A stretch of DNA of 35,302 nt from Octopus sinensis (taxonomy: Eukaryota), in contig NW_021828053.1 in the NCBI RefSeq assembly GCF_006345805.1, positions 1-35,302 on the forward strand, written 5' to 3'. Positions 4,229 through 34,534 of the stretch are shown piece after piece; position 1 is the stretch's first letter; each line of letters begins with the position of its first letter. The notes beneath the pieces are model-generated. The model was given only the letters and a program-made list of their open reading frames with translations. It ran no database searches and was not told where the DNA came from. The translations under genes and the position numbers were made by a program.

Positions 4229-4415
4229 TAGTTGAATGAATTATCTTAGTATGGATAATTCGGTTAACCGATACCTGGGTAGCAAATTCACGTCAGAAAA
4301 ACACGGTTGAAGCTACATGCCAAGGGCAGAGATCACGTGCTTTCGTGTGGAAATGTGTGTGTTTTTTTTAATACAAATAAATGAAAGAATGGAGTTGAAC
4401 GACGATTTAACAAAA

Positions 4416-4515
4416 TTCCTTTATTCTCGACATATGTTTCGAAGGCTGCATATTCCTTAATTTCGAAGGAATAAGAGGTACATTATGCCTCCTTCTCATC
4501 AGGAAAAACAAGGAA
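4416..4515 (-). ncRNA. Type I hammerhead ribozyme (left arm of palindrome 2)
   Basis: Reverse-complement copy with intact CTGATGA (4496-4502), GAAA (4437-4440) and GUC (4429-4431). Confidence 0.7.
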
Positions 4516-4584
4516 CTTATATCAGCATCAAGATGAACAAAAGAGTCATCTAAAAGTTTTTGCTCATCTTGATGCTGACATAAG

Positions 4585-4683
4585 TTCCTTGTTTTTCCTG
4601 ATGAGAAGGCGGCATAATGCACCCCTTATTCCTTCGAAATTAAGAATATGCAGCCTTCGAAACATATGTCGAGAATAAAGGAA
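4585..4683 (+). ncRNA. Type I hammerhead ribozyme (right arm of palindrome 2)
   Basis: CTGATGA 4598-4604; stem II GAAGGC/GCCTTC plus GCATA/TATGC; GAAA 4659-4662; palindromic stem III ACATATGT; GUC 4668-4670; stem I TTCCTTGTTTTTC/GAGAATAAAGGAA. Confidence 0.75.
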
Positions 4684-4789
4684 TTTTGTTAAATCGTCGT
4701 TCAACTCCATTCTTTCATTTATTTATATATATATAATATATATATATATATATGTACATACCTACATATATATGTATATATACATGGAT

Positions 4790-8417: not shown

Positions 8418-8654
8418 GGCGCAGGTGTGGCTGTGTGGTAAGACGCTTGCTTCCCAACCACGTGGTTCCGGGTTGGGTCCCACTGCGTGGCACCTTGGGC
8501 AAGTGTCTTCTACTATAGCTTCGAGTTGACGAAAGCCTTGTGAGTGGATTTGGCGGACGGAAACTGAAAGAGGCCCGTCATATACATACATTCATACATA
8601 CATACATACATACATACATACATACATACATACATACATACATACATACATACA

Positions 8655-10840: not shown

Positions 10841-11079
10841 TGGAGAGAGGTGCGGGGTGTTAAAGAGAGGAGAGTTGCAGAGAAAATTACAAAATCAAAG
10901 AGAACTCATGTATCCGTGTTGCTTGTGTGTTTGTGTTTGTGTGCCAATGTGTGTGTGCGTGTGTGAGCACGCATATACATATATGTGTATGTAGAGAGAG
11001 AAAAAGAGAGAGAAAGAAATTGAGAGACTGAGATCTATAGATTCCAAGAGGAACCTAGTTATATCATCTTAAAAATAGG

Positions 11080-12480
11080 TATATGGAATTTTGGAGAGAA
11101 TGAAAGGCGAAATAAAAGAGCGAGAAAGAGAAAAAAAGAAAAAAAGAAGATAGAAAAGGAAGAATGAAAGAAAGAAGAGAAAGAAAGAAAGAGAGAGGAA
11201 AAAAGAAACAGAAAAAAAAAAGAAACAAGACAAAGAAAGTAAGAAGAATGAAAGAAGAACTTGCGAAAGAAAGAAAAGAGAAACACAAAACAGGGAAAGA
11301 AAGAAGGAAAAGGGAAAAAGAAAGGGAGAAGAAAGACAGAAAGCCATAAGGAAAGCGGAAAGGAAAGAAAGAAAGGTGGGAAGTAAGGAAGTGAGGAAGG
11401 GTGAGACGAAGGAAGAAAGACTGAATACCAAAAGAAAGAAAGGGAGAAAAGAATAAAAAGATAATGAGAGAAAGAAACGAGAAACTAGGAAAGGAAGAAG
11501 GAGAAGGGAAAAAGAAAGAGGGAAGAAAGACAGAAACGAATAAGGAAAGCGAAAAGGAAAAAAAGAAAGAAAGAATGAATGAAAGGAGGGAGGAAGGGAG
11601 GTTGGAAGGAAGGAAGGAAGGAAGGAAGAGAGGAAGGAAGAAAGACTGAAAACAAAAAGAAAGAAAAGAAGAAAAGAAGAAAAAGAAAATGAAAGAATCA
11701 AGAAACAAGGAAAGGAAGAAGGGAAAAAGAGAGAAGAAAGACAGAAAAAAAGGAAAGAGAAAAGGAAAGAATGAAAGAGAGGAAGGAAGGGATTAAGGAA
11801 GAAAAGGAGAGAGAAAGAAAGAATGAAAACCAAAAGAAAGAAAGGAAAAAAAGAAGAAAAAGAAAATGATGGAAAGAAATAAGAAACAAGAAAAGGAAGA
11901 AGGAGAAGGGAAAAAGAGAGAAGAAAGACAGAAAAATAAGGAAAGAGAAAAAGAACGAATGAAAGGGAGGAAGGAAGGGATTAAGGATGAAAAGAAGAGA
12001 GAAAGAAAGAATGAAAACCAAAAGAAAGAAAGGAAAAAAAGAAGAAAAAGAAAATGATGGAAAGAAATAAGAAACAAGAAAAGGAAGAAGGAGAAGAGAA
12101 GGGAAAAAGAGAGAAGAAAGACAGAAAAAAAGGAAAGAGAAAAGGAAAGAATGAAAGAGAGGAAGGAAGGGATTAGGATTAAGGATGAAAAGAAGAGAGA
12201 AAGAAAGAATGAAAACCAAAAGAAAGAAAGGAAGAAAAGAAGAAAAAGAAAATGATAAAAAGAAAGACAGTAAGAAGGAAAGCGAGGAATAAAGAAAGAC
12301 AGAAAGGAAGGAAGGAAGAAAGAAAGAAAGAAACAAAGAAACAAACAAACAAAGAAAGAAAGAAAGAAAGAAAGAAAGACAGGAATAAAGAAAGAAAGGA
12401 GGAAAGAACGGTGGAAAGGAATGAAGGAAGGAAATAGTAAAAGATCGCCAGAAAGACAGGAGAGCAAAGGAAAAAAAATG
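11080..12480 (+). repeat. ~1.4-kb polypurine (AAAG/GGAA/GAA) tract with ~190-bp higher-order unit
   Basis: Anchor GA(A/C)TGAA(A/T)AC(C/A)AAAAGAAAGAAA at 11419, 11644, 11821, 12009, 12207. Confidence 0.85.
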
Positions 12481-12902
12481 TCAATGCTGCAGAAATGAAG
12501 ATACAAAAGATTTTATTTTTAATTTTTTCGATTGAACCAATTCATGATTGCATTGGAAACTGCAAATTATTAGCGGTTAACGATCAGAAAAGCCGTGAAT
12601 TTTGTATCTGCAGAGTTTCCATACTTTAAACCTGAAAGAGGAAAGAAGCTTCACAAATCGCTGCTGTTGCGTTTGTAGCGCGCGCGAAAATTATGGGGTT
12701 TCTTGGGTGGCCATATAAATATATTACATCAATAGGCATACTGCGCTCTGATACGCACGCACACACGCACACATACACACACACACACGCACACACATAC
12801 GCACACACAGATACACACTAACACACACACGTATATAAACGCATATATACAGGAACCCATGCATGCGAGAAGATAGCTTTTGAAATCCAGTGTTAATGAA
12901 CT

Positions 12903-18223: not shown

Positions 18224-18254
<31 letters not shown>
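18138..18254. repeat. (CTA)/(CTG)/(AAT) microsatellite
   Basis: Direct reading. Confidence 0.95.
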
Positions 18255-18258
<4 letters not shown>

Positions 18259-18720
18259 GCCCTGATGTAGTACCAAGCAGTGGCTCTCATGGCTTCTGAT
18301 CTTAACTGATTGGAAGTGTTATCATGTACATTGTTTTGTCTTTGTATAAAAGATGGGCTACAGCAAATATTCTGCTCGATACCACAGATTTGCTTGTCAG
18401 TTGTTTGATCTTAACCAGTTGAGTATGTCCCTTAGTGGCTGACGATATGTGCATCTCTGATCACGTGCAGAAGAAGTGGGGGAGCATCATAGCCATGTGT
18501 TGAGAGGGATTCTTTGGGGTTTGAATAATTCACCTTTGGAAATATTGGTGTTTCGTTCAACATCCTTAAACAATCCTTATTCAGGGACCTTTTCAGCGGG
18601 ATGGGTTACTCAACCAGAAGAAAATTCTAACTGGGCCCCACCTGCAAGGTCATGCGTTGCTTATCTTGATATGAGATTACCATGTCGCGCACATATGGTT
18701 GTGATGCATGTGCCTGGTGT
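18255..18720 (-). mobile_element. Non-LTR retroelement 3' region ending in a (TTA)n tail
   Basis: Near-identical reverse complement of 30745-31001; both abut (TTA)n. Confidence 0.75.
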
Positions 18721-22375: not shown

Positions 22376-22564
22376 TATTGGGTTGAGGAATAACTCATGG
22401 CGTTTTTTTTTGTGTTTTTTTTTCAAATTTAAAAAAGCACTCAGAAATAAAATGGTTTGGCAAAATGTTGTATGTTATTTGAAAGAAAACTTTCTTGCTC
22501 TACAAGGTACTGTGTTTTGATTTTTTAAATTTCATTGATTTTTGTGTATTTTCAGATCATAAAA

Positions 22565-22906
22565 ATAAAATGTCAAGTGGACCAAACTGAGCATTTTCAA
22601 CACCATTTGCTTTTTGCGTTTAATCGAAGTGCTGATTCCGCCATCGCTGCTCGTGAGATTTGTGCTATGTATGGAGAAGGGACAGCGCCTCAAATTACTG
22701 ACCGCCATCGGTTTTCGTGCTTCAAAAATGCGAATTTTGTACTCAGTGACGGATCACACACCGGTCGACCAACTGAGTCCGTCGAAGAGCGATTGAATGA
22801 ACTTCTTCAAGAAAATCCACGTCAAACGACCAGAGAACTGGCGGAGCAGATGGATTATGATAAAAAAAAAAAAACTGTGGTGGACCACCTTCACTCAATG
22901 GGCAAG
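22565..22906 (+). pseudogene. Mariner transposase N-terminal DNA-binding region (start codon now ATA; truncated)
   Basis: EHFQHHLLFAFN...AAREICAMYGE...HTGRP...LLQENPRQTTRELAEQM...VVDHLHSMGK matches Hsmar1/SETMAR-type HTH domains. Confidence 0.9.
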
Positions 22907-23127
22907 CTCCATCGAAATCGATTGGTCGACCAGTGTGTGATCTATCCTTGAGGTCAAAATTCCCATTTTCGAAGCGCGAAAACCAACGATAGGCAGTACT
23001 TCGAGACATTACTCTTTCTCCATACACAGCACAAATCTCTCAAGCAGCTTCGGCGGCCATAACACTTCGATCAAATGCAAAAAGCAAATGGTGTCGAAAA
23101 TGCTGTTTTGTCTACTTGGCATTCCAT
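22907..23127 (-). pseudogene. Second mariner transposase N-terminus, frameshifted
   Basis: MECQVDK...YGERVMSRSTAYRWFSRFENGNFDLKDRSHTGRPIDFD. Confidence 0.9.
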
Positions 23128-27259: not shown

Positions 27260-27480
27260 TCCGGGAGGGTGCTGAAAAGTTCCTGGCTTTAAAGGTATCA
27301 CAAAAGGCCTGGCTGGAGACTCAAACTTCCGAGTTCTTTACGGGGCTTAGAAAAACTGTAAGACCGCAGCAATAAGTGTGTGAATCTCAGAGGGGAAATA
27401 TGTCGAATAAAATCATAATTAACTGATCTTCCTGTATTTTCTTTTACCCAAAGCCAGGAACATTACAGCACCTCTTCATA
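27260..27480 (+). mobile_element. ~220-bp mariner-derived MITE, copy 1
   Basis: TIR core GCTGAAAAGTTCCTGGCTTT / AAAGCCAGGAAC; interior encodes a transposase C-terminus. Confidence 0.8.
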
Positions 27481-27509
27481 TATATATATATATATATATA
27501 TATTGTATC

Positions 27510-28653: not shown

Positions 28654-28873
28654 CGCGAGGCCGTGTTGAAAAGTTTTAGGCTGTAAGGGTATCGCGTAAC
28701 GCCTGACTGGAGGCCCAATCATCCAAGTTCTTTTACAGGGTTTATGAAAACTGAAGGACCTCTGCAATGAGTGTGGGAATCTGAGACAGAAATATGTTGA
28801 ATAAAATCATAATTAACTGATACTCCTCTATTTTCTTTTATCCAAATCCAGGAACTATTCAGCACTCCTTGTA
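28654..28873 (+). mobile_element. Mariner MITE, copy 2
   Basis: Collinear with 27260-27480. Confidence 0.8.
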
Positions 28874-28924
28874 TGTATGTGTGTGCGTCCGTGTATGTAT
28901 GGTGTGTGTGTTTGTGTGTGTGTG

Positions 28925-29145
28925 TGAAGGAGAGCTGAAAAATTCCTGGCTTTAAGAGTATCGCTAAAGGCCTGATTGGAGGTCCAAAATCTCCGAGTGC
29001 TTTTACAGGGCTTAAAAAAACTGAAGGACCGCTGCAATAAGTGTGAATCTGAGAAAGGAATATGTTGAACAAAATCATAATTAACTGATCCTCCTCCTGT
29101 ATTTTCTTTTACCCAACACTAGGAATTTTTCAGTACCCCTTCGTA
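28925..29145 (+). mobile_element. Mariner MITE, copy 3
   Basis: Collinear with 27260-27480. Confidence 0.8.
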
Positions 29146-29297
29146 GACATGGATGTACACACATCCACCTGAAAGGTTCCAAATTCCCCTACACTGGGTA
29201 TTAGAAAATGGAGCTTTTCAGTTATAATACAGCAAAGAACACTCTTCATGTCTATTGAGTTCTGTAATTTAACGCTTCTTGTGGATCAACAGATTGA

Positions 29298-30014
29298 TAC
29301 ATACATACATACATACATACATACATACATACATACATACATACATTACATACATACATACAACTTATGTATGTATGCATGCATGCATGCATACATACAT
29401 ACATACATGCATGCATACATACATACATACATACATACAAACATACATACATACATACACACACACACATACATACATACATACATACATACATACATAC
29501 ATACATACATACATACATGCATGCATGCATACATACATACATACATACATGCATGCATGCATGCATAAATACATACATACATACATACATACATACATAC
29601 ATGCATACATACATGCATACATACAAACATACATACATACATACATCACACATACATACATACATACATACATACAAACATACATACATACATGCATTTG
29701 TGTATATGCATTCCGTAAAATATAAACATGCATACATACATACATACATACATACATCAATGCATGCATGCATAAATACATACATACATACATACATGCA
29801 TACATACAAACATACATACATACACTACATACAACACACCATACATACATACATACTACATATACATACATACATACATACATACATCAACATACTACGT
29901 ACGTACGTACATACATACATACATACAGCGTACGTACGCGTACATACATACATAATACATACATACGTACGTACGTACATACATACATGTTGCATGCATG
30001 CATGCGTACGTACG

Positions 30015-30048
<34 letters not shown>

Positions 30049-30272
30049 CATACATACATATATACATACATACATACATACGTACGTACGTACATACATA
30101 CATACATACATACATACATACATACATACATACGTACATACATACATACATACATACATATGTACGTAGGTACATACATACATACATACATACATACATA
30201 CATACATACATACATACATACATACATACATACATACATACATACTTACATACATACATACATACATACATA
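29298..30272. repeat. ~975-bp (CATA)n tract with CATG and CGTA variant domains
   Basis: Direct reading. Confidence 0.95.
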
Positions 30273-30490
30273 CGGGGAGTGTTGGAAAATTCCTGGCTTT
30301 GAGTAAAAGAGAATACAGGAGGATCAGTTAATTATGATTTTATTCAACATATTCCCCTCTCAGATTCACACACTTATTGCAGTGGTCCTTCAGTTTTTCT
30401 AAACCCTGTAAAAGAACTCGGAAGGTTGGGCCCCCAACAAGGCCTTTCACGATATCCTTAAAGCCAGAAACTTTCGGGCACCCCTTCGTG
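30271..30490 (-). mobile_element. Mariner MITE, copy 4
   Basis: Minus strand reads LLQGLEKLKDHCNKCVNLRGEYVE*, a mariner transposase C-terminus, between TIRs. Confidence 0.85.
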
Positions 30491-30568
30491 TATATATTTT
30501 TTTGTGTGTGTGCATACGTGCGTGTGTGCATACGTGCGTGTGTGCATATATATATATATATATATATG

Positions 30569-30688
30569 TAGGTCCCGGGTTGAGTCGGGGTTAACCACAG
30601 TTAAAAGAGCTTCCTGATGATTTCTTTTGAATGAAACAGTTCTAGTCCTGTAGAAGCTCCTTCTATAAAATAAAAAAAAATAAAATAT
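30569..30688 (+). mobile_element. Short A-tailed insert in (TA)n carrying a hammerhead; probable retroelement 3' end
   Basis: About 120 bp unique sequence ending ATAAAATAAAAAAAAATAAAAT, with (TA)n on both sides. Confidence 0.55.
30607..30659 (+). ncRNA. Compact type I hammerhead ribozyme
   Basis: Stem I GAGCTTC/GAAGCTC (7 bp); CTGATGA 30614-30620; stem II TTC-TTTT-GAA on a U.U pair; GAAA 30633-30636; stem III CAG/CTG with 8-nt loop; GUA 30650-30652. Confidence 0.8.
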
Positions 30689-30744
30689 ATATATATATAT
30701 ATATGCGCCCCCTTCGTAGATACATGCATAAATACATTATATAT

Positions 30745-31001
30745 GAATCCCTCTCAATACACGGCTATGATGCTCACAAAATACTTCTGCTCATGATCAG
30801 AGATGCACATATCGTCAGCCACTAAGGGACATGGTCAACTGGTTAAGGTCAAACAACTGACAAGCAAATCTGTGGTATTGAGCAGAATATTTGCTATAGA
30901 CCATCTTTCATACCAAGACAAAACAATGTACATGATAACACTTCCAATCAGTTAAGATCAGAAGCCACGAGAGCCACTGCTTGGTACTGCATCAGGGCAT
31001 T
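30745..31001 (+). mobile_element. Non-LTR retroelement 3' region with (TTA)n tail
   Basis: Matches 18255-18520 in reverse complement; followed by (TTA)n then (TTG)n. Confidence 0.75.
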
Positions 31002-31009
31002 AATATTAC

Positions 31010-31055
<46 letters not shown>

Positions 31056-31379
31056 GTTGTTGTTGTTGTTGTTGTTATATACCAGCGTGGAAAACGGATG
31101 TTAAACAGTGGTGATGATGATGATGATGATGATGGTGGTCAGGAGACGTGAGTCGCCTGACATTTTATTTTTGTGTTTCTAGGCCTGTGTTAGCCAAAAT
31201 AATTGAAATGTTTTAACCGTTTCACCGTGAAATTAAATTTCATGGTTATTCTAGTAATTATGTTAAACATCGACCAAATAATTAAAATTGGTATTTTCTG
31301 CAAGTCTCACGCTGACTCACTAAACTTGACATAACTCAACAAAAAATAGCTTCAAACAAGTGATTCCTCAACAGAACTT

Positions 31380-31928
31380 GGCGCAGGAGTGGCTGTGTGG
31401 TAAGTAGCATGTTTACCAACCACATGGTTCCGGGTTCAATCGTCAGGCCTGGTCGGCGTTTGTGAGAGATGCAGCATTGAGGATGAATGAGGATGAATCA
31501 ACCCACCCCGGGTGAATGCTGTAAGAAGAAGAAGAAGAAGGGTTCAATACCCCTGCGTGGCAGCTTGGGCAAGTGTCTTCTACCATAGCCTCGGGCCGAC
31601 CAAAGCCTTGTGAGTGGATTTAGTAGACGGAAACTGAAAGAAGCCCATCGTATATATGTATATATCTATATATATATGAGTGTGTGTGTGTGTATGTGTG
31701 TGAATATGTGTGTGTATATATTTGTGTGTCTGTGTTTGCCACCCCCCCCCCAAACATTGCTTGACAACTGATGCTGGTGTGTTTACGTCCGTATAACTTT
31801 GCGATTCGGAAAAAAGAGACCGATAGAATAAGTACTAGGCTTACAAAGAATAAGTCTTGGGGTCGATTTGCTCGACTAAAGGCGGTGCTCCAGCATGGCC
31901 ACAGTCAAATGAGTGAAACAAGTAAAGA
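31380..31928 (+). mobile_element. SINE family A, interrupted in its B box
   Basis: Head resumes after a 99-bp insert at the duplicated GGGTTCAAT. Confidence 0.9.
31441..31539 (+). mobile_element. 5'-truncated RTE-like LINE 3' end, (GAA)n tail, 9-bp TSD
   Basis: TCAACCCACCCCGGGTGAATGC-(AAG)n; GGGTTCAAT at 31432-31440 and 31540-31548. Confidence 0.75.
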
Positions 31929-31944
31929 TATATATATATATATA

Positions 31945-32098
31945 TGACAGGCTTCTTTCAGTTTCCGTTTACCAAATCAACTCACAAGGATTTGGTCAGC
32001 CTGAGGCTATAGTAGAAGACACTTACCCAAGGTGCCACGCATTGCAACTGATCCCGGAACCATGTGGCTTGTAAGCAAGCTTCTTACCACAGAACCAC
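31945..32098 (-). mobile_element. SINE family A 5' half
   Basis: Reverse complement of head through GAAAGAAGCC. Confidence 0.8.
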
Positions 32099-32169
32099 TA
32101 TTCTATACATGTGTGAGTATATGTTTTGTATCCATGAGTGTGTTTTTCCAAAAATTATTCTGCATGTGT

Positions 32170-32589
32170 ATACGTACGTAGTACACATAGACATTCAGCG
32201 TGATGCTGTGTGTATGTGTATAACCATGTACCCACATGTATGTTTGTGTGTGTGTGTGTATTTATCTAAGGGTGTGTCTGTGTGTGTATTGCAAGATGTG
32301 TGTGTGTTGTTTATTTGTGTGTGTAAATGAATGTAGGCGTGAGTGTTTGGAATTAAAACAAATAAATGTGTTTGGTGTGTGCATGTGTGTTGGGGGGGGT
32401 GCACGTGTGTGGGATGTGTGCATGCGTGTGTGCATGTGTGTGTGTCTGTATGTGTTTGTGTAGAAGCATGATTATGAAAGCGCGTGTGTGCAGAAGTATG
32501 ATTATATATATGTGTGGTGTGTGTGAGTGTGTGTGTGTGTGTATACGTATCAGAATACATCTGTCTGCGTGTGTGTACATATAAGACTA

Positions 32590-33685: not shown

Positions 33686-33928
33686 TCCAGGATGTTCCAG
33701 CACCTCGTTACCCAGTTTTTTTTTCAATGGTTTCAGCAGTGTGACGCTGGAACACGCGGGCGTGCATTATCGTTGAAAGATAACATTTACTTTGACAAAA
33801 AGACCTTGCTGTTCGGTGTGATTTGCTGGTTTCAGTTTGTCCATGGGTTTTTCGCTGTAGTCTGCACTGGTGATTGTAGACCCCTCTTCCAGGCAATCCC
33901 TCAGTGTAATCCCTTTTGCGTCCCAAAA
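33686..33928 (-). pseudogene. Mariner transposase catalytic-domain fragment
   Basis: FWDAKGITLRDCLEEGSTITSADY...KLKPA, then after frameshifts a DNARP-like motif, TAETIEK and EVLEHP. Confidence 0.8.
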
Positions 33929-33940
33929 TGAGATATATAT

Positions 33941-34534
33941 TCTTCTATTCGTTTATTCTTTCACTTGTTTCAGTCATTTGACTGCGGCCATAGTGGAACA
34001 ACATCTTTAGTCGAACAAATCGACCCCGGGAATTATTCTTTGTAAGCCTAGTACTTACTCTATCGGATCCTTTTGCCGAACCGCTAAGTTGCGGGGACGT
34101 AAACACAGCCATATTTATGTATTCTTTATCTGTTATTTTTTATATGCTACGTACTTATTTATTATCCCTTTTTATCCAACCGCTAAGTTACAGGGACCGG
34201 TGTTCGAGCAGCGGTGGGAGACAAACAGACAGAAAGTCTCACAAACTTAGATACAAACACACACATAAATACATACATACATACATACATACGTCCGCAG
34301 TACATACATACATAGTACATGCATACATACGCACATACATACATACGTACATACACATACACGCGCACTTAGGGCGAGCTTCTTTCAGTTTCCGTCCACC
34401 AATCGACTCAGACGACTTTGGTGGGCCTGAGGCTATAGTAGAAGACACATGCCCAAGGTGCAACGCATTAGAACTGAACCTAGAACCATGTGGTTGGAAA
34501 GCAACCTCCTTACCGCACAGCAAAGCCTGCGCCT
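33941..34534 (-). mobile_element. SINE family A, diverged, with AT-rich interruption
   Basis: Tail 33941-34110 and head 34375-34534; AACCGCTAAGTT repeated at 34079 and about 34179. Confidence 0.75.

What the first reader, a model, noticed from the sequence alone, without database searches (positions are those of the whole stretch)
30569..30688. Compact hammerhead ribozyme in a 120-bp A-tailed retro-insert
Seen: all three stems and the full core fit in 53 nt: 7-bp stem I, CUGAUGA, 3-bp stem II on a U.U pair, GAAA, a true 4-bp stem III with 8-nt loop, and GUA. Unlike the Penelope-type motifs here, it should fold as a monomer. It sits just before an A-rich tail. It follows a GC-rich segment (30573-30596) with two overlapping pairings, CCCG/CGGG and GGTTGA/TTAACC, which is pseudoknot-like. 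No Penelope ORF or palindrome is adjacent. Established: LINE-associated ribozymes are mostly 5' HDV-like motifs. Inference: a retroelement or retrozyme using a 3' hammerhead for end processing, possibly undescribed.
Basis: partly seen in the sequence, partly recalled or inferred. Interest (0 to 1): 0.85.

Follow-up and report, generated by a model that had tools for sequence, protein, structure and literature searches.

The report
Hammerhead-like motif in octopus SINE fragment
A 53-base stretch in an Octopus sinensis contig carries every consensus base of a type-I hammerhead ribozyme. It sits in a truncated, A-tailed SINE-like insert, so it most likely belongs to an already known kind of ribozyme-bearing retroelement, and its cleavage remains untested.

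Summary
It has a 7-bp stem I, CUGAUGA, a 3-bp stem II resting on a U.U pair, GAAA, a 4-bp stem III, GUA, and a predicted cut after A30652. It is not a random match: a null model checked against the real window expects 2.6e-7 motifs this good per window, and about 0.02-0.06 in the whole 2.7-Gb genome.

The window is a complete Octopus sinensis contig. The 118-nt unit (30568-30685) lies between two (TA)n runs. It begins with a 16-mer that matches the B-box region of the abundant tRNA-derived octopus SINE, and it ends in an A-rich tail. I read it as a 5'-truncated SINE-like retro-insert.

Several points count against a working ribozyme:
- Stem II is marginal (-0.1 kcal/mol).
- The hammerhead fold makes up only about 5% of the predicted ensemble.
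- Rfam hammerhead models score 13-17 bits, against a gathering score of 48.5.
- I could retrieve no second copy, so conservation and covariation could not be tested.

The proposed role in 3' end processing does not fit, because the A-tail lies downstream of the cut site. Hammerhead-bearing SINE-like elements (Sm-alpha) and animal retrozymes are already described, including one family with a U.U pair at the base of helix II.

My verdict is a probable fossil copy and a new member of a known kind. Interest is modest.

The parts
30481..30497 (+). Direct repeat, copy 1 (CCCCTTCGTGTATATAT). It is a possible target-site duplication and also the 3' end of the upstream ~220-bp interspersed repeat.
   Evidence: Local alignment of the two flanks gives 14/17 matches. 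1% of 2000 shuffles score as well. The upstream repeat family is shown.
30498..30567 (+). Simple-sequence block: a T run, a perfect 16-nt tandem repeat GTGTGTGCATACGTGC x2.7 (30506-30548), then (TA)11 at 30546-30567.
   Evidence: TRF, a regex scan and the sequence itself. The Rfam mir-297/mir-466 'hits' here are microsatellite hairpins, not genes.
30568..30685 (+). Unique 118-nt unit with 36.8% GC. I interpret it as a 5'-truncated SINE-like retro-insert.
   Evidence: No other copy exists in the window by blastn or nhmmer. The unit is bounded by (TA)n runs on both sides.
30571..30586 (+). B-box / T-arm-like 16-mer, GGTCCCGGGTTGAGTC.
   Evidence: It matches the B-box region of the abundant tRNA-derived SINE (GGTTCCGGGTTCAGTC) with 2 mismatches. 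The window has 7 such matches and the other 6 are copies of that SINE; 0.00 are expected from 100 shuffles. The body downstream does not align to that SINE.
30574..30596 (+).
   Evidence: The complementarities can be read directly from the sequence. The MFE fold uses only the first hairpin. Forming both at once would need connecting loops of 0, 2 and 1 nt (inference).
30607..30613 (+). Helix I, 5' strand (positions 2.7-2.1), GAGCUUC.
   Evidence: Pair probabilities are 0.92-1.0.
30614..30620 (+). Hammerhead core C3-A9, CUGAUGA.
30621..30632 (+). Helix II and loop 2: U10.1.U11.1, then U-A, U-A and C-G pairs, with a UUUU loop.
   Evidence: The isolated hairpin is worth -0.1 kcal/mol and its pair probabilities are 0.13-0.18.
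30633..30636 (+). Core G12 A13 A14 plus A15.1 (GAAA).
30636..30651 (+). Helix III: ACAG/CUGU, which includes the A15.1-U16.1 pair. The 8-nt loop UUCUAGUC has the palindrome CUAG at its centre.
   Evidence: The isolated hairpin is worth -1.4 kcal/mol and its pair probabilities are 0.30-0.35.
30652..30653 (+). Predicted cleavage site: the GUA triplet ends at A30652 (H17), and the cut would fall between 30652 and 30653.
   Evidence: The position follows from the hammerhead consensus. Cleavage was not tested.
30653..30659 (+). Helix I, 3' strand (positions 1.1-1.7), GAAGCUC.
30667..30685 (+). A-rich tail AAAATAAAAAAAAATAAAA, which contains AATAAA at 30669-30674.
30685..30704 (+). (TA)10 microsatellite on the 3' side of the unit.
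30709..30725 (+). Direct repeat, copy 2 (CCCCTTCGTAGATACAT). It is a possible target-site duplication.

Best explanation
The 118-nt unit at 30568-30685 is a solitary, 5'-truncated copy of a short non-autonomous retroposon of the tRNA-derived SINE-like type. What remains is a B-box region, a body and an A-rich tail. The unit inserted into A/T-rich simple sequence in Octopus sinensis.

Its body carries a genuine type-I hammerhead motif, meaning one that did not arise by chance. In transcripts of the parent element this motif would fold into three helices around the CUGAUGA / GAAA core. It would then cleave itself after the GUA triplet (the equivalent of A30652), leaving 2',3'-cyclic phosphate and 5'-OH ends. 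In Sm-alpha elements and animal retrozymes, this reaction cuts multimeric or read-through RNA to unit length and allows the RNA to be circularised.

This particular copy is most likely a fossil. Its helix II is very weak and no loop-loop contacts are visible, so any cleavage should be slow and depend on high Mg2+.

Shown: the motif, its statistical significance, the B-box homology, the A-rich tail and the flanking repeats. Inferred: retroposition, membership of a multi-copy family, and catalysis.
For: - The full core and all three helices are present, with 14 Watson-Crick pairs.
- Chance expectation is 2.6e-7 per window and at most about 0.06 per 2.7-Gb genome. The null was validated with permuted-core decoys on the real sequence.
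- The hammerhead fold is within 0.3 kcal/mol of the MFE, both alone and in context.
- The loop-3 centre CUAG is palindromic, as is typical of metazoan type-I hammerheads (PMC4209133).
- The 16-mer at 30571-30586 matches the B-box region of the abundant tRNA-derived SINE. The window has 7 such matches against 0.00 expected.
- The unit has an A-rich 3' end containing AATAAA and is flanked by (TA)n runs. A 17-nt direct repeat flanks the whole block (p about 0.01).
- The same contig carries two canonical Penelope-type hammerheads, so elements bearing hammerheads are active in this genome.
- A U.U mismatch at the base of helix II occurs in the roughly 60,000-copy axolotl HHR_Amex2 family, which still self-cleaves (PMC7229834).
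- tRNA-derived SINE-like elements with hammerheads are known (Sm-alpha / Sj-alpha, PMC2770079).
Against: - No second copy was found in the window or in any collection I could reach. Conservation and covariation are therefore untested.
- The near-universal G10.1-C11.1 pair is absent (PMC4209133).
- Helix II is worth only -0.1 kcal/mol, and all three helices form together in only about 5% of the ensemble.
- The folding z-score is only -0.9.
- The best Rfam hammerhead score is 13-17 bits against a gathering score of 48.5. C/D snoRNA models score just as well.
- ARAGORN and Rfam find no tRNA head.
- The unit is not in a tandem array.
- The target-site duplication is weak, and it lies outside the microsatellites.
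Confidence: 0.5

Rival explanations
1. This is a chance hammerhead look-alike. The unit is the 3' fragment of an ordinary SINE or LINE. Its terminal 7-bp stem-loop, perhaps a recognition hairpin for the partner reverse transcriptase, happens to enclose CUGAUGA...GAAA...U in the right places. It has no ribozyme ancestry or activity.
For: - The non-canonical U.U at 10.1/11.1, the A/U-only helix II (-0.1 kcal/mol) and the lack of visible tertiary-contact loops fit this reading.
- Rfam hammerhead models give only 13-17 bits.
- The folding z-score is -0.9.
- There is only one copy, with no tandem partner.
- A 21-base core-plus-stem-II pattern found unrelated chance matches inside bacterial coding sequence at about the expected rate.
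- The number of windows and genomes the scan covered is unknown. A loose descriptor expects 5-16 such motifs per Gb.
Against: - At the observed quality (all pairs Watson-Crick, 7-bp helix I), the calibrated null expects 2.6e-7 per window and at most about 0.06 per octopus genome.
- The palindromic loop 3 and the position inside a retroposon in a genome rich in Penelope-like elements and hammerheads both favour a real motif.
Confidence: 0.36
2. One reading: an undescribed retroelement or retrozyme that uses an active, monomeric 3' hammerhead to process its own 3' end.
For: - Helix III (4 bp) is more stable than the 1-2 bp helix III of Penelope-type motifs, so monomeric folding is conceivable.
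- The motif lies 8 nt from the A-rich tract.
- No paper in the held library describes a hammerhead in a non-Penelope element of cephalopods.
Against: - The cut site is upstream of the A-rich tail. A processed RNA would lack the tail that this DNA copy carries.
- The hammerhead fold is only about 5% of the ensemble.
- The kind is already described: Sm-alpha / Sj-alpha, non-LTR retrozymes, and hammerheads of Penelope-like elements.
- No family or parent element could be shown.
Confidence: 0.08
3. This is a retro-copied C/D-box snoRNA-like RNA with a terminal stem and a C box (UGAUGA, 30615-30620) but a decayed D box.
For: Rfam C/D snoRNA models align the terminal stem and the C box at 13-19 bits, as high as any hammerhead model (SNORD102 19.3, SNORD11 13.3). 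The unit is A-tailed, as snoRNA retro-copies are.
Against: - The D-box position reads CUGU (30648-30651), not CUGA.
- There are no D' or C' boxes.
- 53 nt is too short for a eukaryotic C/D snoRNA.
- All scores are far below the gathering scores (47-55).
- The hammerhead description uses 13 fixed bases and 14 pairs with no violation in the core.
Confidence: 0.03

Closest known systems
Sm-alpha / Sj-alpha SINE-like retroposons of schistosomes (tRNA-derived, carrying a type-I hammerhead)
   Same: Both are short non-autonomous retroposons with a tRNA-type pol III head. Here only the B-box region survives. Both carry a type-I hammerhead in the body, are A/T-rich and are dispersed (PMC2770079).
   Different: - There is no sequence similarity, and the Rfam hammerhead models built partly on those motifs give only 13-17 bits.
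- Helix II here is U.U plus 3 A/U-rich pairs, rather than a G-C-closed helix with loop contacts.
- Helix III here is longer.
- Sm-alpha has more than 10,000 copies, whereas only one copy is demonstrated here.
- The host is a cephalopod, not a flatworm.
Animal non-LTR retrozymes (type-I hammerhead in 170-400-bp low-GC tandem repeats; circRNA intermediates), including axolotl HHR_Amex2
   Same: Both have a type-I topology, low GC (36.8% here) and a palindromic loop-3 centre. The U.U mismatch at the base of helix II has a direct precedent in HHR_Amex2, which still cleaves (22% in 1 h as a monomer). Solo 'monomer' copies of retrozymes are common (PMC7229834; bioRxiv 10.64898/2026.07.22.740005).
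   Different: - There is no tandem arrangement here.
- The unit is only 118 nt and ends in an A-rich tail.
- Circular RNA was not tested.
- Helix II here is weaker than any described example that I could read.
Hammerheads of Penelope-like elements (pLTR min-HHR), as present in this same contig at 4380-4720
   Same: Both are type-I motifs linked to retroelements in the same genome. Penelope-like elements are usually 5'-truncated, carry the hammerhead near the 3' end, and prefer microsatellite targets such as (TA)n (PMC8557442; PMC4209133).
   Different: The local Penelope-type motifs have G10.1-C11.1, a 5-6-bp helix II with a roughly 42-nt loop, and a helix III of C-AUAU-G (2 bp counting the A15.1-U16.1 pair, palindromic). 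They also sit in an inverted pair. The candidate has none of these features. It shares only TTCCTGATGA with them, and no RT or endonuclease ORF lies nearby.
The abundant tRNA-derived SINE of Octopus (7 copies in this contig)
   Same: The two share the B-box / T-arm 16-mer with 2 mismatches. Both end in simple A/T-rich sequence.
   Different: The body and tail do not align. That SINE has no hammerhead core. The candidate lacks the A-box half.

Membership tests
Hammerhead ribozyme, type I | The conserved core: C3 U4 G5 A6 N7 G8 A9, G12 A13 A14, the A15.1-U16.1 pair, and H17 not G. | tested here: met
   CTGATGA 30614-20, GAAA 30633-36, U30651 and A30652.
Hammerhead ribozyme, type I | Three helices meet at the core, with helix I open (type-I connectivity). 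| tested here: met
   Helix I has 7 bp, helix II has 3 bp plus the U.U pair, and helix III has 4 bp, all Watson-Crick. Chance expectation is 2.6e-7 per window.
Hammerhead ribozyme, type I | A G10.1-C11.1 pair closes a stable helix II. | tested here: not met
   Positions 10.1/11.1 are U30621.U30632, and helix II is worth -0.1 kcal/mol. PMC4209133 calls this pair 'highly conserved'. A natural exception with U.U at the base does exist (HHR_Amex2, PMC7229834).
Hammerhead ribozyme, type I | The hammerhead fold is the preferred secondary structure. | tested here: inconclusive
   The fold is -10.2 against an MFE of -10.5 kcal/mol for the 53-mer, and -21.0 against -21.3 in context. It makes up about 5% of the ensemble, and the z-score is -0.9.
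Hammerhead ribozyme, type I | The sequence reaches the curated score of an Rfam hammerhead covariance model. | tested here: not met
   The best score is 17 bits, or 13.4 bits on the 61-nt slice, against a gathering score of 48.5. This test carries limited weight, because the canonical Penelope-type hammerheads at 4380-4720 get no hammerhead hit at all.
Hammerhead ribozyme, type I | Conservation of the core and covariation in the helices among homologues. | not testable with these tools
   No homologue could be retrieved. The window holds none. Scans of the metagenome, genome and viral contig collections returned only chance hits or nothing. Protein-word searches also returned nothing.
Hammerhead ribozyme, type I | Site-specific, Mg2+-dependent self-cleavage. 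| not testable with these tools
   This needs a bench assay.
Animal non-LTR retrozyme | A head-to-tail tandem array of 170-400-bp units, each with a type-I hammerhead. | tested here: not met
   TRF finds no repeat with a period above 28 nt anywhere in 29000-32500. There is a single copy in 35 kb. Solo monomers are known, however.
Animal non-LTR retrozyme | Low GC content (<45-50%). | tested here: met
   36.8% GC across 30568-30684.
Hammerhead of a Penelope-like element (pLTR) | A helix III of 0-2 bp with a palindromic loop, a large helix II closed by G10.1-C11.1, and a location in a pLTR next to an RT / GIY-YIG ORF or in an inverted pair. | tested here: not met
   The candidate has a 4-bp helix III with an 8-nt loop, a U.U pair at the base of helix II, and no palindrome. 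No RT or endonuclease domain lies in 26-35 kb. Compare the true Penelope-type motifs at 4598 (+) and 4502 (-).
tRNA-derived SINE-like retroposon (Sm-alpha type) | A pol III head with A and B boxes derived from a tRNA. | tested here: inconclusive
   The B-box-region 16-mer is present and significant. The A-box half is absent, with simple repeats in its place. ARAGORN and the Rfam tRNA model find nothing.
tRNA-derived SINE-like retroposon (Sm-alpha type) | An A-rich or simple-repeat 3' tail and target-site duplications. | tested here: inconclusive
   The A-rich tail at 30667-30685 is present. The only candidate duplication is the imperfect 17-nt repeat (14/17 matches, p about 0.01), and it lies outside the flanking microsatellites.
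C/D-box snoRNA (retro-copy) | A C box RUGAUGA and a D box CUGA flanked by a terminal stem, with a guide region. | tested here: not met
   A C-box-like UGAUGA and a terminal stem are present, but the D position reads CUGU and the RNA would be only 53 nt. Rfam scores are 13-19 bits against gathering scores of 47-55.

The most novel reading that the evidence does not exclude
Octopus genomes may harbour a multi-copy family of tRNA-derived SINE-like elements whose body encodes a compact type-I hammerhead able to act as a monomer. That hammerhead would have a miniature helix II based on a U.U pair. Such a family would be a lineage of 'ribozyme SINEs' in molluscs, independent of flatworm Sm-alpha and distinct from the Penelope-type motifs of the same genome.
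Probability: 0.15. Interest if true: 0.5.

Novelty: new member of a known kind. Interest (0 to 1): 0.3.

Why it matters
If genomic copies and a cleavage assay confirm it, this would add cephalopods to the animals that carry hammerheads in SINE-like or retrozyme-like elements. It would also give a second natural example of a hammerhead that tolerates a U.U pair at the base of a very short helix II. That is useful for setting the limits of hammerhead search descriptors. It would not change the current picture of what these ribozymes do. If it is not confirmed, it shows how convincing a single-copy look-alike can be.

Tried and rejected
- **Rfam, gathering mode, whole window:** no hits. In E-value mode there were only sub-threshold hammerhead and snoRNA hits, and the mir-297/mir-466 'hits' at 30492-30562 are microsatellite hairpins. 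Running Rfam on the Penelope-type palindrome as a positive control also gave no hammerhead hit, so I gave the Rfam negative little weight.
- **Second copy within the window:** blastn, blastn-short and nhmmer found none.
- **Exact-pattern scans of public collections:**
  - The flank 21-mer found nothing in the metagenome or viral contig collections.
  - The core-plus-stem-II pattern found one hit in the metagenome contigs and one in the prokaryotic genome contigs. Both lie in unrelated, apparently protein-coding sequence and are chance matches.
  - Two more viral scans found nothing.
- **Reaching non-coding octopus DNA through the protein index:** A peptide translated from the abundant SINE gave none either. 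Exact look-ups of two window ORFs found nothing on record.
- **Mariner ORF search:** it identified the organism as Octopus sinensis but returned only this contig for that species. The two ENA contigs that carry related mariners share only microsatellites with the window.
- **Diverged copy of the abundant SINE?** Rejected: only the B-box 16-mer aligns.
- **Extension of the upstream 220-bp repeat or the downstream (ATT)n SINE?** Rejected: other copies of both end before reaching the unit.
- **Pseudoknot reading of 30573-30596:** rejected on loop lengths.
- **C/D snoRNA reading:** rejected because there is no D box.
- **Supplementary consensus sequences of octopus Penelope-like elements (PMC8557442):** not held. 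The Sm-alpha primary paper (PMC108972) is not held either.

Full report
**What is there.** GAGCTTC (30607-30613) pairs with GAAGCTC (30653-30659) as a 7-bp helix I. CTGATGA (30614-30620) supplies C3-A9. TTTC-TTTT-GAAT (30621-30632) forms a helix II of three Watson-Crick pairs resting on a U.U pair at positions 10.1/11.1. GAAA (30633-30636) supplies G12-A15.1. ACAG/CTGT (30636-39 / 30648-51) forms a 4-bp helix III with the 8-nt loop TTCTAGTC. A30652 is H17, so the cut would fall between 30652 and 30653. Helix I is the open helix, which makes this a type-I hammerhead. An A-rich tract (AAAATAAAAAAAAATAAAA, 30667-30685, containing AATAAA) starts 8 nt after helix I.

**Is it chance?** I wrote a descriptor that accepts anything at least as good as this motif: CUGAUGA; a free 10.1/11.1 pair plus at least 3 pairs; GAAA; A15.1-U16.1 plus at least 3 pairs; H17; and at least 7 pairs in helix I. 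Using the window's base composition, the expectation with Watson-Crick pairs only is 2.6e-7 per window and 0.007 per Gb, or about 0.02 per Gb for all three topologies. With G.U pairs allowed and helix I of 5 bp or more, it is 2e-4 per window and 5-16 per Gb. A Monte Carlo run agreed with the formula (11 observed against 9.4 expected). I then tested the null on the real sequence by replacing the two core strings with all 2,516 permuted decoy combinations. Decoy hits matched expectation (17 against 21.7; 1 against 1.2; 0 against 0.5; 1 against 0.5), while the true core gave its single hit at 30614. The motif is therefore far beyond chance for one window. It would be unexpected (at most about 0.06) even in the whole 2.7-Gb genome. 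I do not know how many windows and genomes the scan covered, and the definition of 'as good' was made after seeing the motif, so I keep chance as a serious rival.

**Does it look like a working ribozyme?** Only partly.
- The hammerhead fold of the 53-mer is -10.2 kcal/mol against an MFE of -10.5, with a z-score of -0.9 against shuffles.
- In the 123-nt context it is -21.0 against -21.3, and all three helices form together in about 5% of the ensemble.
- Helix I is solid, with pair probabilities above 0.9. Helix II alone is worth -0.1 kcal/mol and helix III -1.4.
- No internal loop in helix I or special loop 2 suggests the loop-loop contacts that make natural hammerheads fast at cellular Mg2+. 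That requirement comes from established knowledge and is cited in PMC4209133.
- Rfam finds nothing at gathering thresholds. In E-value mode the best hammerhead-clan score is 17 bits, or 13.4 on a 61-nt slice, against a gathering score of 48.5. C/D snoRNA models score as high because of UGAUGA plus the terminal stem.
- I give the Rfam result little weight. Two textbook Penelope-type hammerheads in the same contig get no hammerhead hit at all.

**Context.** A mariner-derived ORF at 22535-22951 is 100% identical to an NCBI protein named SETMAR-like from Octopus sinensis, and that protein's only contig is 35,302 bp long. The window is therefore a whole contig of that species.

The unit at 30568-30685 (36.8% GC) lies between (TA)11 (30546-30567) and (TA)10 (30685-30704). 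Upstream, at 30260-30490, is a roughly 220-bp interspersed repeat with three more copies in the window. Downstream, at 30745-31035, is a SINE-like repeat with an (ATT)n tail and two more copies. Other copies of both families end before reaching the unit, so it belongs to neither.

The GC-rich start of the unit is not a pseudoknot. GGTCCCGGGTTGAGTC (30571-30586) matches the B-box / T-arm region of the abundant tRNA-derived octopus SINE (GGTTCCGGGTTCAGTC) with two mismatches. The window holds seven such matches, and the other six are copies of that SINE; 0.00 are expected from shuffles. Beyond these 16 bases the unit does not align to that SINE.

An imperfect 17-nt direct repeat (CCCCTTCGTGTATATAT 30481-97 and CCCCTTCGTAGATACAT 30709-25, p about 0.01) brackets the unit together with its simple-repeat flanks. 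No RT or endonuclease domain exists within 26-35 kb; the only domain found is a mariner fragment near 33.8 kb.

Taken together, this is a 5'-truncated, A-tailed, tRNA-derived SINE-like retro-insert in A/T-rich simple sequence. Its A-box half is missing or has been overwritten by repeats.

**Related sequences.** I could not obtain any.
- There is no second copy in the window.
- Exact-pattern scans of the metagenome, prokaryotic genome and viral contig collections gave nothing, or single chance matches in unrelated, apparently coding sequence.
- The protein index holds no ORFs from this unit or from the abundant SINE.
- The only octopus locus reachable through proteins is this contig.

The decisive test, whether related copies keep the core and covary in the helices, therefore remains open.

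**Comparison with what is known.**
- Metazoan type-I hammerheads typically have a 6-bp helix I, a 4-bp helix II closed by a highly conserved G10.1-C11.1 pair, and a short helix III with a palindromic loop. Penelope-type variants have a larger helix II and almost no helix III, and they act as dimers (PMC4209133).
- The contig's own Penelope-type pair fits that description. The motifs are the + copy (core 4598-4604, GAAA 4659-62, C17 at 4670) and the - copy (core at 4502, C17 at 4429). Each has a GAAGGC/GCCUUC helix II, a GAAAC-AUAU-GUC helix III and an inverted arrangement. The candidate does not fit it.
- The candidate resembles the 'canonical' type-I motifs of non-LTR retrozymes more closely. 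Its oddest feature has a precedent: the roughly 60,000-copy axolotl HHR_Amex2 has a U.U mismatch at the base of helix II and still cleaves, at 22% in an hour as a monomer and better as a dimer (PMC7229834).
- Solo retrozyme monomers and 5'-truncated Penelope-like elements are common. Penelope-like elements favour microsatellite targets such as (TA)n (PMC8557442).
- tRNA-derived SINE-like elements that carry hammerheads are long known in schistosomes (Sm-alpha / Sj-alpha; PMC2770079).
- The held literature mentions no hammerhead in a non-Penelope element of cephalopods.

**Mechanism and rivals.** My best reading (confidence 0.5) is that this is a fossil copy of a hammerhead-bearing SINE-like or retrozyme-like retroposon. 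In the parent RNA the motif would cut after the GUA triplet, trimming multimeric or read-through transcripts. At this locus it is probably inert or very slow.

The cut site lies upstream of the A-rich tail, so a processed RNA would have lost the tail that this DNA copy retains. The template of this copy must have been uncleaved or re-ligated.

**Verdict.** If real, this is a new member of a known kind rather than a new mechanism. Interest is 0.3.

Noticed in passing
window 4380-4720: This is a near-perfect palindrome carrying two canonical Penelope-type type-I hammerheads in inverted orientation. The + copy has its core at 4598-4604, helix II GAAGGC/GCCUUC with a roughly 42-nt loop, GAAAC-AUAU-GUC, and C17 at 4670. 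The - copy has its core at 4502 and C17 at 4429. Rfam gives no hammerhead hit here even in E-value mode; only miRNA-like hairpin hits appear.
   Followed up: partly
window 22535-23039 and 33770-33952: These are mariner-type transposon remnants. An HTH_48-type ORF is annotated at NCBI as 'SETMAR-like [Octopus sinensis]' (100% identity, and this contig is its only contig). A second HTH fragment lies on the minus strand, and there is a Transposase_1 fragment near 33.8 kb. This is what identified the window as a complete 35,302-bp Octopus sinensis contig.
   Followed up: partly
window, B-box positions 8464, 19463(-), 23519(-), 24797, 31426, 32061(-), and also 34487(-): An abundant tRNA-derived SINE (AGGCGCAGGAGTGGCTGTGTGG...GGTTCCGGGTTCAGTCC...GGAAACTGAAAGAAGCC) is present about seven times in 35 kb. 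Each copy is followed by (TA)n or (TG)n microsatellite. The copy at 31426 carries an insertion of about 120 nt just after the B box.
   Followed up: partly
window 30260-30490, 28670-28884(-), 28926-29132(-), 27267-27489(-): This is a roughly 220-bp interspersed repeat family with copies 82-84% identical. Two copies lie head to tail, separated by a (CA)n run. The family's nature is unknown, and I saw no obvious tRNA head.
   Followed up: no
window 30745-31055, 18224-18512(-), 590-728: This is a SINE-like repeat of about 290 bp ending in an (ATT)n tail. The copies at 30745 and 18224 are 92% identical.
   Followed up: no
window 29297-30273 and throughout: The microsatellite load is extreme. Examples include (ATAC)~245 directly upstream of the finding, and long (TA)n, (TG)n, (AAT)n, (GA)n/(GT)n blocks near 15.3-15.6 kb. 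In Rfam E-value mode these produce many false miRNA-family hits (mir-297, mir-466 and others).
   Followed up: no
window 11000-12500: This is a purine-only strand-biased block (GC skew up to 0.76, AT skew up to 0.81). It is made of GAA/GGA-rich units that recur about every 190 nt, for example at 11716, 11903 and 12093, which suggests a minisatellite.
   Followed up: no
L001 2711-2735(-); L002 312-336(+): The 21-base pattern CCTGATGATTTC-N4-GAATGAAAC occurs once in the metagenome contigs and once in a Bacteroidetes MAG. Both lie in otherwise unrelated sequence that reads as open frame (peptide context PDDF..MKQ). This is about the number expected by chance, and it illustrates how a core-only match can mislead.
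   Followed up: yes
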